From NCBI GenBank assembly GCA_021613535.1, contig CP075497.1, positions 3,534,001 through 3,598,000 of the forward strand: a stretch of DNA of 64,000 nt, read 5' to 3'. The stretch comes from Adineta vaga. Its lineage: Eukaryota > Animalia > Rotifera. Both the position numbers and the translations under genes were made by a program. The notes beneath the pieces are model-generated. The model did not search any database, was not told the DNA's origin, and was given only the letters and a program-made list of their open reading frames with translations. Below, in pieces: positions 41,470 to 64,000 of the stretch. Positions within the stretch are counted from its first letter, which is position 1; the number at the start of each line of letters is the position of its first letter.

Positions 41470-58860
<17,391 letters not shown>

Positions 58861-59231
58861 TCAACAAGAACGAATCGATATATTTTACTTTACTGTTTTG
58901 TTATCAAGCAAGCAATAGGGAGCTTTATTCACTTATGAAATAGTTTTGCTCCATCGTTTGTGTGTGTGTATTATATTTATATTTTTCTTGTGTTTAAAAA
59001 AATGAATAATAAAAAGCAAGGACTTTAATCATTAAAAGATATTTTAAATTCTACCGCAATTATAGGGCCTAATTGATTTTATTAGAAAAACAGAGTAAAA
59101 TAACCGAAACTATATGAAGAAAAAAATCATTTTGATAGGATAATTATAAATTAGTACGATTCAATTGATAATATAAATCACATTTTAATCAAGATTTAAA
59201 AAGGAAGGAATTTTTTTGTGTCTTTTATCAT

Positions 59232-62200
59232 TCATTTGTGCGAATGATCTTCATTCAATGTTGACATACGAACAAAATTACGTCGATCATTTCTCAATGG
59301 TCTTGCATTGACTGTTAACAAACTTTCATTATCCGAAGAATTGATGACATAATCATTCCTATAACCATATCGTCTTTGATCAATTGTACGATCACTAGTA
59401 CTTCGTTGTAATGGACGTTTTGTGTATGTATCTGAATAAATTCGACTAACTGGTTCTCTCCATTGAACTGTTGATCGATTAAATATTGTATTTTCTAAAG
59501 TTTCTCTTGCTTTATTTGTATATCCACCTGGTATTTCTTGAGTATCGAGTTCAAAATGTCGATGTAGGAGTGCTAGAAGTGCACGTTTATAACTTCCAAT
59601 TACTTGCAACTAAGAAAAAGAAATTTGAAGAAATAGAAAGAAAGATTTTTTTTGTTTCTTAAACAAACTAGAATACGATCATGAAGTTTATGTTTTGTAA
59701 TATTTTCATATTCATTTTTAATTTGTCCTATATCCACTTCACAACGAGAAACTATAATGCGATTTAAATCATCTTCTTTTGTTATAACATCCTAGACATA
59801 AGAGAAATGTATTAAGAAATTTTTCATTTATAAAAGTTTACTTGAAGACATTTTTCTAATTCATATGCAAAATATTTTGAACGATCACGAATTATTCGAA
59901 CTAAAAATCAGAAAATAAAAATAAAATATATCGAAAGAGATATTTTCTTTTATTAAAAATCCTACTGATTGATATAAGAGTATGATAAAGTTTTCCTTCG
60001 ATATTTTTTTCAATGGTTTCTTCAATATCCACATGACTATACTGTTGATAAGCAGTGAAGATATGTTTTAATTGTGTGTTGCTTTAAAGAATAAGAACAA
60101 AAAAGGTTTTAATCTATCGAAAATATGAATAGAAACCTTCGTGTACATAAAAGTCGAACTATTGTTGATCCATCAAGTCGCCATTTGGATTCTGTTTCGA
60201 ATAATTCTCGTGCATCTCGAATAATTTCTTGATCATTAACATTACTATCTTCTGAACGATTTGATTGAAGTATAGTCATAAATAATTGTTTAGAATGATC
60301 ATTTCGATCACTTCGAATATCTTCTTCAATTGTACTTTTGAATACTAAAATGAAAGGAAAACAATGCATAAGTGAAGTCATTGATTGATATTCATACGTT
60401 TCAAATAAGTATTTCGAACATTTTGAATATGTTTATTTGAACGATTAAACAGTATATCAATAAAAATATTTACATCAATTGTTCCTCGTTTACATGTACG
60501 CCGTAATTCAAAGCAATCATGTTCAACCATTGATAGTAATAATATTCTTAATAATTTACTTAAACTTCCATTAGTTATCTTCTCTATAGCATCGCCAAGA
60601 TTCTAAAATCGAACAAATCATTCAATGATAAACAAAATTCTTCTCTATTTTTAACAACCTGATTGAACATGTCTTTATATCTATCACGAATTAGTAAACG
60701 TTGTGCAAGAGTTCGATTACAGATTATTCGTATAATACCTAATTCATCAATAGGAGAATCATTCACTAATCTATGCAATATTCGACAATCTAAATAAACA
60801 GAAACAAACTCATTCATATTTATATCAATTTGATTTACAAACCGTGTTCAACAGAACTGTTTCTTGTTAAGTTTGCGTCCTATCAGAAAAGAAAAAACAA
60901 GATCAAGATTACTTCAATCAAAAGATAAATCGACATACAGTATCACTTCGTTTTATTGCTGGACGTTCCAAATATCGTGCAGGTGATATCGATCGGATAG
61001 GACGAAATGGTATTGGATCATTGGGATAACGGGATATGTCTTGTAACGACGACCGATACGATGATGTTTGTCTTGGAGAATTGATAGATGAAAAGGATAA
61101 GTCTCCTTCATGAAAAGTAATTCGTTTATGTGAATGTTTGGAATAACGATCTAATCGTTCACGATAATTTTCAATTTGTTGTTTAAGTGCTTTTCGAATG
61201 CGTAATATTTCATTAAGTTGTCTTTCACGTTCTTGAATGGATTGATTCAATTTTGTTAAATATCGTTCTCGTTCTGATAATCCATGTTGACCAGTTTTAT
61301 CCGAATTCATTCGTTGTTCTATATTGTTAATTTTCGAAGAAAGTTCATTGATATTTCCACGTACAATATTGATCTGTATATAAACATCTTTTCTTGCATT
61401 TTGATATTCTTCTAATGTAGCTTCGTGTTCTTTTGAAACTTTTGGTGTTGAACGAGTTATATCCATTTTATAACGATAGAATTCTAATTCAAAATTTCGA
61501 TGTAATTCTTCTCGACGAACTTCAATCTTCTTTTCATAATCATCACGTATACGTTGAAGTTCTTGTTTTAATTGATCTGAATAATAATTTGGTGGTTGAA
61601 AACCAGCTATTTGATAGATATCAATGGATTTACGAATATCATCAAGAGCTGTTATTTGAATATCTTGTTTAGTTATTTTTTCATCTTCTAAAATTTTCAA
61701 TTCAGTTTGTAAAGCTTGTCGAGCAAATCTTTCTTCGTCTAATTCATAACGTAAACGAATTTTTCGAGCATCTAACGCTTGATTTTTCAATAGATAAAAT
61801 TTACTTTCATCATCTAAATTTCGTATTCGACGTTGAATAAATTGACATTCAGCACTATTTTGTGCAATTTGACGTTCATAATCAAATATAACTTTACTAA
61901 TTTGATCTCGTTTTGATAATATTTGTTGATATTGTTTATCATTTGTCGATGTCTCCTTCAGTGCACTATTAAATTTCGTTTCTAATGCTGGTTTTGTTTG
62001 CGAAGTTTGATATTGCAATTTCTTGGCGTTTTCAATTTGATTTCGAAAGAGTTTTTCAATAATTGAAGAATTTTCATAACCTTGTTTTTCAAGCCATTCA
62101 ATTTGTAATTCTTGTGCACGATTATGTGTATCTAAATGGCAACATTTCAGTATTGTTGTACAAAGTATTTCAGTAAGCTTGGATAATTCACGATATTCAT

Positions 62201-62501
62201 CAATAATACGTTCACCATCAATACTATGCAATGATGGAATCGTTGCAAATCTTGAAGGTTGAATCAATGTAGCTAGACCAAGATCAGTTGTTGTAGTAGG
62301 CGGACGATTAGAACCAACTTTAGCCCATGCTATACCACGAAAAGGACCTTGAAACGTATCAGAAGGATTCGATACAATCACACGTGGTCGAATGTATTGT
62401 ATAACTGGTGAATCATATTTGGATGATGGCGATTTTGCTCGATGATATTCACTAGATTTATATTTCGTATCATCAAATTTTACAACACTGTTCGAAGGCA
62501 T
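59232..62501 (-). CDS. Intermediate-filament-rod / annexin fusion protein (9 exons)
   Basis: Exon 1 (62501-60939) encodes an IF-like rod; a 37-nt linker exon (60879-60843) follows; then four annexin repeats (DCRILHRL..DELGIIRIICNRT; DCFELRR; DARELF; IIVSRCEVD..GSYKRALLALL) and a tail of about 110 aa; all joins are GT-AG and in frame. Confidence 0.82.
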
Positions 62502-63242
62502 CTTTTTTTTGTCAAATAAACAGATTCGAAATTACAGTTACTCGACAATTTTCCCTTTTATCAAAAAATTGATAACGATAGACCGATCCTTTTTGTTTTA
62601 GTTTTAATGGTAAATGAAATACCGCAGATAAGTTTATTTTTATTTTAAATATTAAATTGTCTTTTCTTGCGTTTTTATTTGGTCTACTATCAACTCACTT
62701 TACTACGAAGATAATATTCTGTTTGACTTGTATTTGCAAACTTGAAAAGAAAAAAAGATATTTTGACGAGTAATGTTTCGGTGTTACTTAAGATTCTTCT
62801 ACGTTTTCTGATATTATCTACATTAAAGTATTGATAAAAATATTTATTCCGAAGTAAAGATATCATTTAACGTATAATCGATCATCTCAGATGAAGTTCT
62901 TGATATTTAAGGACATCGTACAATAATCTGTTGTCATCAAATAGCAACAGACATAGTTGATAACCTTCAATAGATCTTTCCATAACATTTTGTAGAAAAC
63001 TGCATGATCTTAGGGATTCTTTGACATTCTGATTCTCATTTTGTTCACTTGATAAAAAATTTTGAAAATAAATAGCTCGAATAAGAAAAATGAAGTGTTA
63101 ACAAAACAAAATTCCTTTCGAGTTAATAAAGAAAAAAAAATTGCCTACAAAAAACAGAACAAAGAAACTGTTTCTAGTACTACTAGAAAAACACACACAC
63201 GCACACGCATTCAAGCTGAGATAAGGCATATTTTGTAGAAGA

Positions 63243-64000
63243 TCAATTAGATATATCGTCAAAAAAACGACATTGAGGTAACGAATCAATGCTGAGAAAT
63301 TGTTTAGCTAGAAAACATTACGATCAGAAATATTATCACCAATGAAAATATCTTACATTTCGGTAGTTGTTTTGCTGCAATATGTAATTTTTCTACAAAA
63401 TTTGGAATACCTAAACAAAAGTAAACAATAAAATTCCTGATTTATCTACGAAGAACAAATGTAATATTACCACTCTGTGCTAAATATGAATAAGTCGATG
63501 TCGGCATGGAAGCTTTAGCATCTTCATGATATGTTAATAAAAATTTTATTCCTTTCTAGAAGAAAACAAGAAAAAAAAGAAATGAAATAGTAAAAACATA
63601 ATCTTGTCTGTTCCTACTTCATCAAGTTTGGTTTTTGATTGAATTATCATTGATGATTCATATTTATTCACTCGAACACATTTTTTATCATCATGAACAT
63701 TCGGATGATTAATTGAATGACATTTAATAACAATTTTTGGTGGAATATTCGTTGATGTATCGAAACAATAACGTCGAACATAGAGATAATCACGATGATT
63801 AAATGGAAATGGAAATTTTTGTATCCAATGAACAATATCACTTTGAGTACTTTCATTCGCATCAACTACCGATAATCTTAATGCATGATCATCCCAATTC
63901 ATTCGATAATCAAGATCAAGCTATTCATAGAAATGAAAAACAAATGATTCATTTCAAGAAATTTTACTTACTTGTACTTGAAAAAATACTAATGCAGATA
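63243..64000 (-). CDS. STARD7: START-domain lipid transfer protein, STARD7/PCTP-like (3' part only; 5' end outside the window)
   Basis: LDLDYRMNWD..IVHWIQKFPFPFNHRDYLYVRR, FLLTYHED, SGIPNFVEKLHIAA; predicted stop TGA at 63245-63243. Confidence 0.8.

What the first reader, a model, noticed from the sequence alone, without database searches (positions are those of the whole stretch)
59232..62501. Intermediate-filament rod fused to an annexin core: candidate filament-to-membrane anchor
Seen: exon 1 (521 codons) splices in frame via a 37-nt linker exon into four annexin repeats, with no stop or intergenic gap. Known-family comparison: exon 1 tracks protostome cytoplasmic IF/lamin-type rods (ELSKLTEIL..HNRAQ as coil 1a; IEKLFRNQIENAKKL; AECQFIQRRIRNLDDE; LRYELDEERFARQALQTELKILEDE as long coil 1b; YYSDQLKQELQRIRDDYE as L12/coil 2; LKQQIENYRERLD resembling the LDAEIAIYRKMLE terminator). 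The annexin core sits where such proteins usually carry a lamin-tail Ig domain. I do not know this architecture as a described family. Inference: it may co-polymerise with IF networks and tether them to membranes, for example in the IF-like intracytoplasmic lamina of the rotifer syncytial integument, possibly relevant to membrane stability or repair during desiccation.
Basis: partly seen in the sequence, partly recalled or inferred. Interest (0 to 1): 0.9.

Follow-up and report, generated by a model that had tools for sequence, protein, structure and literature searches.

The report
Intermediate-filament–annexin fusion protein gene
A bdelloid rotifer gene really does make one messenger RNA that joins a cytoskeletal intermediate-filament rod to a complete annexin domain, but that annexin has lost all its usual calcium-binding loops, so the proposed calcium-driven membrane anchoring is unlikely and its function is untested.

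Summary
On the minus strand, 62501-59232 is one nine-exon gene with a single 939-codon frame and eight GT..AG introns of 50-65 nt. One 2979-nt contig runs from the start codon into the 3' UTR. A DNA run shows no joints.

Exon 1 is a divergent intermediate-filament (IF) protein:
- Pfam Filament scores 43.5 bits against a cut-off of 40.
- It aligns almost without gaps to a canonical Adineta vaga IF (E 6e-29).
- The rod has lamin length.

Exons 3-9 encode a four-repeat annexin core, followed by a disordered tail.

The fusion is conserved across Adineta and Rotaria in two old subfamilies. One of these is the ohnologue on chromosome 3 of this genome; an earlier scan note on another piece of this genome (s1-489561) describes the same kind of fusion. 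The nearest Didymodactylos relative has no annexin.

All four canonical Ca2+ loops (GxGT) are gone family-wide, whereas sister bdelloid annexins keep six. The gene is real and I found no paper describing it, although databases hold it as unnamed predictions. I rate it a new variant of a known kind, of moderate to high interest.

The parts
62502..62595 (-). 5' UTR (minimum extent); an in-frame TAA lies 10 codons upstream of the ATG
   Evidence: X12 record 10 reaches 62595; sequence read
62199..62501 (-). Exon 1, codons 1-101: disordered head rich in S/T/P/G
   Evidence: AF2 pLDDT <50 for residues 1-93; S+T+P+G fraction 0.37
61137..62198 (-). Exon 1, codons 102-455: IF rod of about 354 residues. 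Coil 1 is about 102-285, linker L12 about 286-305, coil 2 about 306-455. The 2B end motif is QIENYRERLD
   Evidence: Pfam Filament 43.5 bits; BLASTP E 6e-29 to a canonical A. vaga IF; AF2 helices 102-273, 281-285, 306-348 and 357-455; heptad periodicity z 4.55 with a register shift near 402-418
60939..61136 (-). Exon 1, codons 456-521: disordered post-rod tail/linker
   Evidence: AF2 pLDDT <50 for residues 457-521
60880..60938 (-). Intron 1 (59 nt, GTATGT..TAG), containing the in-frame TGA at 60918-60920 that would end an unspliced product
60843..60879 (-). Exon 2, the 37-nt linker exon (DANLTRNSSVEH)
   Evidence: joints on both sides in X1, X10 and X12; frame check
60790..60842 (-). Intron 2 (53 nt). 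It holds an ATG at 60817 in frame with exon 3; the ohnologue has TTG at the matching ORF start
60659..60789 (-). Exon 3: annexin repeat 1 (AB loop reads NDSPIDE instead of KGxGTDE)
   Evidence: Pfam Annexin 29.3 bits, profile 5-44; alignment A1
60398..60602 (-). Exon 4: end of repeat 1 and first part of repeat 2 (loop reads KRGTIDV)
   Evidence: Pfam Annexin 29.7 bits
60137..60344 (-). Exon 5: end of repeat 2, inter-lobe linker and start of repeat 3 (loop reads KWRLDGS; the Trp is invariant in the family)
   Evidence: Pfam Annexin 17.7 bits, profile 1-27
59966..60081 (-). Exon 6: second part of repeat 3
   Evidence: Pfam Annexin 26.9 bits, profile 29-66
59842..59900 (-). Exon 7: start of repeat 4
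   Evidence: joints; alignment A1
59669..59791 (-). Exon 8: repeat 4 (loop reads QDVITKED)
   Evidence: Pfam Annexin 32.7 bits
59232..59609 (-). Exon 9: last helix of repeat 4, then a disordered tail of about 110 residues and the stop codon (59232-59234)
   Evidence: in the A. ricciae orthologue the tail has pLDDT about 30
59448..59468 (-). Conserved tail motif VQWREPV (the W is invariant and the V nearly invariant across 17 family members)
   Evidence: alignments A1 and A3
59067..59231 (-). 3' UTR (extent taken from contigs)
   Evidence: X1 record 2 reaches 59067 and X10 record 6 reaches 59074

Best explanation
This is one bdelloid-rotifer (Adineta vaga, chromosome 6) gene. It encodes a 939-residue chimeric protein with these parts: a disordered head, a lamin-length intermediate-filament coiled-coil rod, a disordered linker, a complete four-repeat annexin core, and a disordered C-terminal tail carrying a conserved VQW(R/K)xP motif.

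Shown here:
- It is made as a single spliced mRNA.
- The rod is homologous to canonical IF rods.
- The annexin half has the annexin fold.
- The fusion is old and conserved in two ohnologous subfamilies across Adineta and Rotaria.
- All four canonical type II Ca2+ loops are lost family-wide, while the rest of the core stays conserved.

Inferred:
- The rod forms parallel coiled-coil dimers, and possibly higher IF-like polymers, so annexin cores are displayed in pairs at the rod's C-terminal end, where lamins and protostome IFs carry an Ig-like tail.
- The Ca2+-blind annexin core acts as a constitutive docking module, not a Ca2+-switched one. It would bind either acidic lipid or a protein partner.

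My odds: fusion protein real, about 0.95. Structural or cytoskeletal linker role of some kind, about 0.6. Direct membrane binding, about 0.3.
For: One mRNA:
- All eight joints appear in RNA-like contigs from three studies, one contig spans the whole CDS, and a DNA run has none.
- There is a single 939-codon frame.
- In the chromosome 3 ohnologue, the same exon that encodes the rod runs on into the annexin N-terminal segment (..EGTITRFTDFDVEQ). The fusion there does not depend on a splice.

IF rod:
- Pfam Filament scores 43.5 bits against a cut-off of 40, over profile positions 2-307 of 313.
- It is 28% identical over 276 residues, with 15 gaps, to a canonical A. vaga IF that scores 129 bits on Filament (E 6e-29).
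- A profile of the family retrieves only bona fide Filament and Filament+LTD proteins, aligned along the whole rod.
- AF2 predicts helices of the expected lengths.
- Heptad periodicity gives z 4.55, with a +4 register shift about 45 residues before the rod end, as for the IF stutter.

Annexin:
- E 1e-55 to 1e-60 against solved annexins A4, A5 and A2.
- All four repeats are seen exon by exon.
- The AF2 core of the A. ricciae orthologue has block-mean pLDDT mostly above 90. Foldseek gives target-normalised TM 0.87 and rmsd 2.7 A to annexin A4.

Loss of Ca2+ loops:
- 17 of 18 family members have no GxG[TS] motif, against 6 in each of 10 other long annexins: 8 bdelloid, 1 mollusc and gecko A6.
- Residue-level alignments agree.

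Conservation:
- The fused rods form a clade (100/99 support) with subfamilies A and B, each holding both Adineta and Rotaria members.
- Annexin exons follow the rod exon in every family locus I examined.
- Between runs there are 13 synonymous and 15 non-synonymous differences, with no stops or frameshifts.
Against: - There is no protein-level evidence. Contigs cannot show isoform ratios, so an intron-1-retaining, IF-only product ending at the TGA at 60918 is not excluded.
- The run types 'RNA?' and '?' are the tool's guesses. Their RNA nature is inferred from the joints and the intergenic gaps.
- The rod is a weak Filament match. Several orthologues fall below the Pfam cut-off (17-37 bits).
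- A family profile finds no solved IF chain at E<=0.01.
- The coil 1A LNDR motif is not conserved.
- Dimer prediction gave no verdict.
- Nothing here shows binding to filaments, membranes or any partner.
- Loss of GxGT makes classical membrane binding unlikely, but it does not define what replaces it.
Confidence: 0.7

Rival explanations
1. The protein co-polymerises with ordinary IFs and tethers them to membranes through classical Ca2+-dependent annexin-phospholipid binding, for example in the intracytoplasmic lamina of the syncytial integument. It would have a role in membrane stability or repair during desiccation.
For: - The architecture places a domain of a membrane-binding family at the end of an IF rod.
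- The interfacial Trp of the repeat 3 loop is invariant in the family.
- A. vaga has many other IF genes that could be partners.
Against: - All four GxGT loops are lost in this gene and in 17 of 18 relatives, while sister annexins keep six.
- The coil 1A LNDR motif, used in IF assembly, has diverged.
- There are no localisation or expression data. Literature searches found nothing linking annexins or this protein to the rotifer lamina or to desiccation.
Confidence: 0.12
2. The rod no longer builds 10-nm filaments. It serves only as a dimerising or tetramerising stalk that makes the annexin core bivalent. That would be a built-in equivalent of the annexin A2-S100A10 heterotetramer, cross-linking two surfaces or partners.
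For: - The rod is much more divergent than canonical IFs: 17-44 bits on Filament against 88-214 bits for canonical ones.
- The LNDR motif is lost.
- Against A. ricciae, the annexin exons (53-79% identical) are on the whole at least as conserved as the rod (54-58%).
Against: - Rod length, linker positions and the 2B end motif are all kept after a long period of divergence. This is more constraint than a mere dimerisation stalk needs.
- I ran no assembly test.
Confidence: 0.22
3. These are two functionally separate genes, and the fused mRNA is a read-through or conjoined by-product. The real products would be an IF ending at the intronic TGA (60918) and an annexin started from the ATG at 60817 or from a trans-spliced acceptor.
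For: - An in-frame TGA lies 18 nt into intron 1.
- An ATG in intron 2 is in frame with exon 3.
- Bdelloids use SL trans-splicing (background knowledge).
- Other notes of this scan propose operons in this genome.
Against: - The only forms assembled in three studies are the spliced, in-frame ones.
- The ohnologue has no ATG at the equivalent place, and one exon there encodes both the rod and the start of the annexin.
- Adjacency and frame are conserved in every family locus examined and across genera.
Confidence: 0.04
4. The protein is a nuclear-lamina component. Rotifer lamins lack the CaaX membrane anchor, and a lamin-length IF carrying an annexin could provide the link to the envelope.
For: - All rotifer lamins examined lack CaaX (PMC10125929, read).
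- The rod has lamin length.
- A conserved dibasic KR sits about 12 residues after the rod end (A2 consensus). It reads TTKRKS in the ohnologue, roughly where lamins carry their NLS.
Against: - The window copy has no clear NLS (KHSHKR).
- There is no lamin-tail domain.
- In the tree the family groups away from the LTD-bearing sequence.
- The idea is purely positional speculation.
Confidence: 0.04

Closest known systems
Protostome cytoplasmic intermediate filaments and lamins (Pfam PF00038 Filament, usually with a PF00932 lamin-tail domain)
   Same: - Disordered head, a rod of about 354 residues with the long (lamin-type) coil 1B, an L12 linker, and a coil 2 with a stutter-like register shift.
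- A YRxxL(D/E) motif at the rod end.
- Co-linear, nearly gap-free alignment to canonical A. vaga IFs.
   Different: - There is no lamin-tail Ig domain, no CaaX and no clear NLS. The tail is replaced by an annexin core.
- Coil 1A LNDR is replaced by LSKLTEIL, with conserved cysteines.
- The Filament score is marginal: 43.5 bits here and below the cut-off in several orthologues.
Vertebrate-type annexins (A4, A5, A2, A6; Pfam PF00191)
   Same: - Four repeats, a full-length core match at E 1e-55 to 1e-60, and the annexin fold at target-normalised TM 0.87.
- The ohnologue keeps the typical core start, GT(I/V)xxFxxFdxxxD(A/C).
   Different: - The N-terminal 'variable region' is a head, IF rod and linker of about 530 residues, rather than a short peptide.
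- All type II Ca2+ loops (GxGT) are lost.
- 'DA' at the helix A start is replaced by 'DC', and several cysteines are conserved.
- There is an extra disordered C-terminal tail of about 110 residues.
Annexins A9 and A10 (vertebrate annexins with degenerate type II sites); background knowledge, not tested here
   Same: An annexin core that is kept under constraint although the canonical Ca2+ loops are lost.
   Different: - They are stand-alone proteins of about 320-345 aa.
- Their loss of sites is independent.
- They are not specifically related by sequence to this core; the best solved matches were A6, A4 and A5.
Other lineage-specific IF domain swaps, such as the copepod lamin-like proteins with a PDZ domain reported by Kollmar 2015 (PMC4448529), and the Pomphorhynchus laevis Filament protein with a weak C2 hit found here (P0073)
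   Same: An IF rod combined with a non-IF globular domain.
   Different: - The partner domain and its position differ.
- None of them carries an annexin.
- The copepod proteins were later disputed as lamins (PMC10125929).
Didymodactylos carnosus IF protein P0055 (674 aa), the nearest non-fused relative
   Same: - Head end and whole rod are 30% identical (E 3e-56).
- It is sister to the fusion clade with 100/100 support.
   Different: - It is a single-exon gene with a Pfam-blank tail of about 200 aa.
- No annexin exon lies in the 8 kb downstream.
- It keeps a more canonical coil 1A (YVQKVRFLE).

Membership tests
Intermediate filament proteins (PF00038) | Profile match to the IF rod at or above the curated cut-off | tested here: met
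   Exon 1 scores 43.5 bits against a cut-off of 40, E 4.2e-11, residues 102-450 on profile positions 2-307 of 313. The match is marginal: orthologues score 17-37 bits.
Intermediate filament proteins (PF00038) | Homology to undisputed IF proteins along the whole rod | tested here: met
   BLASTP E 6e-29 to an A. vaga IF that scores 129 bits on Filament. The family profile retrieves Filament and Filament+LTD proteins over profile positions about 98-460. No solved IF chain was found at E<=0.01; only weak lamin coil 2B-end hits at E about 0.1.
Intermediate filament proteins (PF00038) | Head, rod and tail layout with coil 1, L12 and coil 2 of canonical lengths (long coil 1B in lamins and protostome IFs) | tested here: met
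   AF2 gives disorder at 1-101, helices at 102-273, 281-285, 306-348 and 357-455, then disorder. The Filament match spans 349 residues on 306 profile positions, like the canonical A. vaga IFs at 352 on 312.
Intermediate filament proteins (PF00038) | Heptad periodicity with a stutter in coil 2B | tested here: inconclusive
   Hydrophobic a/d periodicity gives z 4.55 against shuffles. The register shifts by +4 between segments 353-418 and 402-466. The method is home-made and crude.
Intermediate filament proteins (PF00038) | Consensus motifs at the rod ends (coil 1A LNDR; coil 2B EIATYRKLLEGEE) | tested here: inconclusive
   The 2B end is recognisable: QIENYRERLD aligns with EIRRYRLLLEG of an A. 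vaga IF. The 1A motif is not kept: ELSKLTEIL against QLNDKFAQY.
Intermediate filament proteins (PF00038) | Self-assembly into coiled-coil dimers and 10-nm filaments | not testable with these tools
   Complex prediction on two copies of residues 95-460 gave no verdict. This needs in vitro assembly and EM.
Lamins | NLS, lamin-tail Ig domain (PF00932) and CaaX box | tested here: not met
   Neither the exons nor the orthologues give an LTD hit. The C-terminus reads ..EDHSHK. I saw no clear NLS.
Annexins (PF00191) | Four annexin repeats of about 70 residues | tested here: met
   Exon by exon: repeat 1 (29.3 bits), repeat 2 (29.7), repeat 3 (17.7 + 26.9) and repeat 4 (32.7). Orthologues show four stretches at 134-182 bits.
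Annexins (PF00191) | Annexin core fold (four five-helix bundles) | tested here: met
   Tested on the A. ricciae orthologue, which is 53-79% identical to the window's annexin-core exons. AF2 block-mean pLDDT is mostly above 90 for residues 11-317. Foldseek gives target-normalised TM 0.87 and rmsd 2.7 A to annexin A4. The window's own joined protein was not folded.
Annexins (PF00191) | Type II Ca2+ site: GxGT loop plus an acidic residue about 38 positions downstream | tested here: not met
   The window exons and 17 of 18 family members have no GxG[TS], against six in each comparison annexin. The alignment to annexin A6 shows G>K/N, G>K, GT>RR and G>S/T>C in the four loops.
Annexins (PF00191) | Ca2+-dependent binding to acidic phospholipid | not testable with these tools
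   This needs liposome co-sedimentation with and without Ca2+.

The most novel reading that the evidence does not exclude
Bdelloid rotifers have an IF-family polymer whose tail domain is an annexin core re-tooled to work without Ca2+. It would couple a filament lattice directly and constitutively to a membrane. Candidate sites are the plasma-membrane face of the syncytial integument's intracytoplasmic lamina, or, since rotifer lamins lack CaaX, the nuclear envelope. That would be a filament-membrane link built into one polypeptide, with no plakin- or farnesyl-type adaptor.
Probability: 0.2. Interest if true: 0.8.

Novelty: new variant of a known kind. Interest (0 to 1): 0.62.

Why it matters
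IF proteins and annexins are two of the best-studied structural families in animals. IF tails and annexin N-termini are the parts that give each family its specificity. Here a whole IF head and rod serves as the annexin's N-terminal region. Seen the other way, a whole annexin serves as the IF's tail.

The combination has been kept in two ohnologous lineages across at least two bdelloid families. It therefore does something useful.

Three points make it worth testing:
- It offers a natural experiment on what an annexin core does once every canonical Ca2+ loop is gone.
- It is a candidate direct link between a filament system and a membrane or cortical partner.
- It may bear on the still poorly defined molecular make-up of the rotifer syncytial integument.

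It is also a concrete target. The protein is about 110 kDa, and its exon-junction peptides can be looked for in existing bdelloid proteomes.

Tried and rejected
- A rod family profile (A2) against solved structures gave no hit at E<=0.01. The single sequence gave only E about 0.1 hits to lamin A and keratin 5 coil 2B-end fragments, mixed with chance hits. This is not usable as evidence on its own.
- Complex prediction on two copies of rod residues 95-460 scored 0.00. That is no verdict, neither for nor against dimerisation.
- Five literature searches found no description of an IF-annexin protein. Reading the two lamin-evolution papers that treat Adineta found no mention of annexin either. Subscription-only papers are not covered.
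- The operon or two-gene reading is rejected on the splice joints and the ohnologue's exon structure.
- A retrocopy as the source of the intron-less contigs is rejected. The genome holds only one 100% locus, which has introns. The DNA run shows no joints.
- A. steineri model P0048 (1356 aa, Filament+Annexin+LRR) is taken to be an annotation merge with a neighbouring LRR gene, because sister models of 977 aa lack the LRRs.
Database work used exon references or stored orthologues. The joined CDS was built only inside scripts, to count frame and stops and to classify SNPs.
Full report
**Where and what**

The window is G000:C6:3534001-3598000, from a 100.8-Mb genome in six contigs. The ohnologue on contig 3 translates identically (zero branch length in the tree) to stored protein P0220, named 'hypothetical protein I4U23_014466 [Adineta vaga]'. 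That protein sits on a contig of 20,354,754 bp, which is exactly the length of G000:C3. The organism is therefore the bdelloid rotifer Adineta vaga. The local GC of about 0.23-0.35 and the 50-65-nt introns fit this.

**Checking the observation**

There is an in-frame TAA ten codons upstream of the ATG. A GTATGT donor follows codon 521 at 60938. The 59-nt intron contains the TGA at 60920-60918.

A 37-nt exon (60879-60843) and a 53-nt intron lead into exon 3 at 60789. With the six further introns, the nine exons add up to 2820 nt. That is 939 codons plus the stop, with no internal stop, and every intron is GT..AG.

I laid four public runs on 58800-63000. Three come from three different studies (X1, X10, X12). 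The tool labels them only as 'RNA?' or '?'. They carry contigs with all eight joints at exactly these positions. Record 6 of X10 (2979 nt) runs from 59074 in the 3' UTR to the ATG at 62501, across all of them.

These three runs have no depth in the intergenic bin 62607-62747. They hold the neighbouring genes as separate contigs. The fourth run, X8, behaves as genomic DNA: even depth of about 130-285, introns covered without a break, and no joint.

The genome holds only one 100% copy, and it has introns. The intron-less contigs are therefore transcripts, not a retrocopy. The predicted junctions 60939>60879 and 60843>60789 are confirmed.

Contigs cannot give isoform proportions. A minor intron-1-retaining form remains possible.

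**The N-terminal half is a real but divergent IF**

- Pfam Filament matches residues 102-450 to profile positions 2-307 of 313, at 43.5 bits against a cut-off of 40. That is marginal, and orthologues score only 17-37 bits, so I looked for independent support.
- A. vaga has some twenty loci with strong Filament matches. Against one of them (L009:3271-4557, 129 bits on Filament), exon 1 aligns at 28% identity over 276 residues with only 15 gaps (E 6e-29). The alignment runs from the end of the head through coil 1A, the long coil 1B, L12 and into coil 2.
- Against another A. vaga IF, the alignment reaches the rod end. There KALKQQIENYR lies on TTLEEEIRRYR, which is followed by LLLEG.
- A profile of 35 family rods was searched against 1.84 billion representative proteins. 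After the family itself, it returns proteins that Pfam calls Filament at 113-214 bits, many with a lamin-tail domain. They match co-linearly over profile positions about 98-460.
- AlphaFold2 on the family alignment gives a disordered head (1-101), helices at 102-273, 281-285, 306-348 and 357-455, and a disordered tail. That is a rod of about 354 residues, the lamin/protostome length.
- A simple heptad scan shows a/d hydrophobic periodicity well above shuffles (z 4.55). It also shows a +4 register shift about 45 residues before the rod end, where IFs have their stutter.

Some points count against easy membership. The coil 1A LNDR motif reads LSKLTEIL, with conserved cysteines nearby. The family profile finds no solved IF chain at E<=0.01. 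A dimer prediction gave no verdict.

**The C-terminal half is a complete annexin without Ca2+ loops**

- Scanned exon by exon, the window gives Annexin hits that cover repeats 1 to 4.
- The orthologues' cores match annexins A4, A5 and A2 at E 1e-55 to 1e-60 over the full four repeats, and each half of annexin A6 at E 1e-49 to 1e-55.
- The AlphaFold2 model of the A. ricciae orthologue's core has block-mean pLDDT mostly above 90. It superposes on annexin A4 at target-normalised TM 0.87 and rmsd 2.7 A.
- The roughly 100 residues after the core are predicted disordered. They contain one invariant Trp, in a conserved VQW(R/K)xP motif.

The type II Ca2+ loop (K-G-x-G-T) is destroyed in every repeat:

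| Repeat | Window reads | Canonical loop |
|---|---|---|
| 1 | NDSPIDE | KGxGTDE |
| 2 | KRGTIDV | GxGT lost |
| 3 | KWRLDGS | KWGTDE |
| 4 | QDVITKED | KGxGTDD |

Across 18 family members, 17 have no GxG[TS] at all and one has a single motif. Each of the ten other long annexins the same search returned has six. Those are eight bdelloid double-core annexins, one from a mollusc, and gecko A6.

The loss is therefore specific to the fusion family, old and complete. Meanwhile the rest of the core is conserved: 53-79% identity between A. vaga and A. ricciae exons, with 52 invariant columns across 17 sequences.

**History**

- The exon 1 search found predictions of about 890-920 aa with annexin in A. 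ricciae, A. steineri, Rotaria socialis, R. sordida and two unnamed Rotaria species, plus a partial one in R. magnacalcarata. It also found many metagenome ORFs that are simply exon 1 called by a prokaryotic gene finder.
- In every family locus I fetched, annexin exons follow the rod exon on the same strand. These loci are the chromosome 3 ohnologue and three divergent metagenome contigs. One of them keeps the convergent dynein gene seen in this window.
- In the chromosome 3 copy, the rod exon itself runs into the start of the annexin core (..EGTITRFTDFDVEQ; compare the usual annexin start G-T/S-x-x-x-F-x-x-F-D/N, recalled from memory). No mini-exon is involved there.
- A maximum-likelihood tree of rods puts all fused proteins in one clade (100/99 support). 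It splits into subfamily A (this gene) and subfamily B (the chromosome 3 gene), each with Adineta and Rotaria members. Subfamily B is well supported (100/99). Subfamily A is only moderately supported (89/88).
- The duplication therefore predates the split of those genera, as expected for the bdelloid ancient tetraploidy. The tree is midpoint-rooted, for drawing only.
- The sister branch is a Didymodactylos carnosus protein of 674 aa. It is a single-exon gene with a Pfam-blank tail and no annexin within 8 kb downstream. Either the fusion arose after that lineage branched off, or it was lost there. I cannot tell which.
- No Filament+Annexin protein from outside bdelloids appeared in either the word-indexed or the exhaustive search.
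- Differences between sequencing runs in the coding sequence are 13 synonymous and 15 non-synonymous, with no stop or frameshift. That fits moderate purifying selection on a live gene.

**How it most likely works**

Shown: one mRNA, one frame, an IF-homologous rod, an annexin fold, loss of the Ca2+ loops, and long conservation.

Inferred from what IF rods do: parallel coiled-coil dimers, and perhaps higher-order polymers. These would present annexin cores in pairs at the rod's C-terminal end, on a flexible linker of about 80 residues.

Inferred from the loop loss together with the conservation: the core is a constitutive docking surface rather than a Ca2+ switch. It could bind acidic lipid without Ca2+ (the repeat 3 Trp is invariant) or bind a protein.

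I put about 0.6 on a structural linker role of some kind, and about 0.3 on direct membrane binding. The main rival, at about 0.22, is that the rod is now only an oligomerising stalk that makes the annexin bivalent. A two-gene or read-through reading gets about 0.04, and a nuclear-envelope role about 0.04.

**Known or new**

Databases already hold these proteins as unnamed predictions, some automatically called 'Annexin' or carrying both Pfam domains.

I found no paper that describes an IF-annexin protein. Two surveys of lamin and IF evolution that cover Adineta do not mention annexin. The search covers open-access text only.

I class it as a new variant of known kinds. It is an IF with an unprecedented tail domain, and equally an annexin with an unprecedented N-terminal region and no canonical Ca2+ sites.

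**Limits**

Exon references and stored orthologues stood in for it. The fold of the annexin half is that of the A. ricciae orthologue.
- The run types are the tool's guesses.
- I have no protein-level, localisation or expression-level evidence.

Noticed in passing
window 57530-58717 (+): This is the C-terminal end of a dynein heavy chain (AAA_lid_11 and Dynein_C, 167 and 68 bits), convergent with the fusion gene. Its transcript contigs end near 59021 and the fusion gene's near 59067, so the two 3' ends lie about 45 nt apart. The same neighbour is kept in metagenome locus L026.
   Followed up: partly
window 63546-63902 (-): An ORF with a START lipid-transfer domain match (33.8 bits) lies upstream of the fusion gene. 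A separately transcribed gene starts near 62842-62860, according to the RNA-like contigs.
   Followed up: no
P0073 (Pomphorhynchus laevis, 859 aa): An acanthocephalan protein has a strong Filament rod (165 bits) and a marginal C2-domain hit in its tail (22.7-23.5 bits against a cut-off of 22). It may be a second case in Syndermata of an IF rod joined to a Ca2+/lipid-binding module. The hit is weak and the gene model is unchecked.
   Followed up: partly
window 60817 (-), inside intron 2: An ATG is in frame with annexin exon 3 and could start an annexin-only product from an internal transcript. The ohnologue has TTG at the matching ORF start, and no such transcript was seen in the contigs.
   Followed up: partly
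G000:C5:12173317-12181062 and G000:C2:5508869-5519517: There are tandem clusters of canonical IF genes on two chromosomes, presumably ohnologous. PF00038 gives 59 matches over roughly twenty loci in this genome, so the IF repertoire is expanded.
   Followed up: no
P0209-P0217 (Didymodactylos, Rotaria; 1031-1342 aa): Bdelloid annexins with two cores (six GxGT motifs each) and long N-terminal extensions are the closest non-fused relatives of the fusion's annexin half. A similar protein exists in the mussel Potamilus streckersoni (P0219).
   Followed up: no
window 62501-62504: A 3-nt deletion just upstream of the ATG, in the 5' UTR (it removes the C and two T of the T-run on the plus strand), is present in runs X12 and X8 but not in the window. 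The ATG is kept.
   Followed up: no
P0048 (Adineta steineri, 1356 aa): This deposited gene model joins the IF-annexin gene to a downstream leucine-rich-repeat gene. Sister models of 977 aa lack the LRRs, so it is probably an annotation merge.
   Followed up: partly
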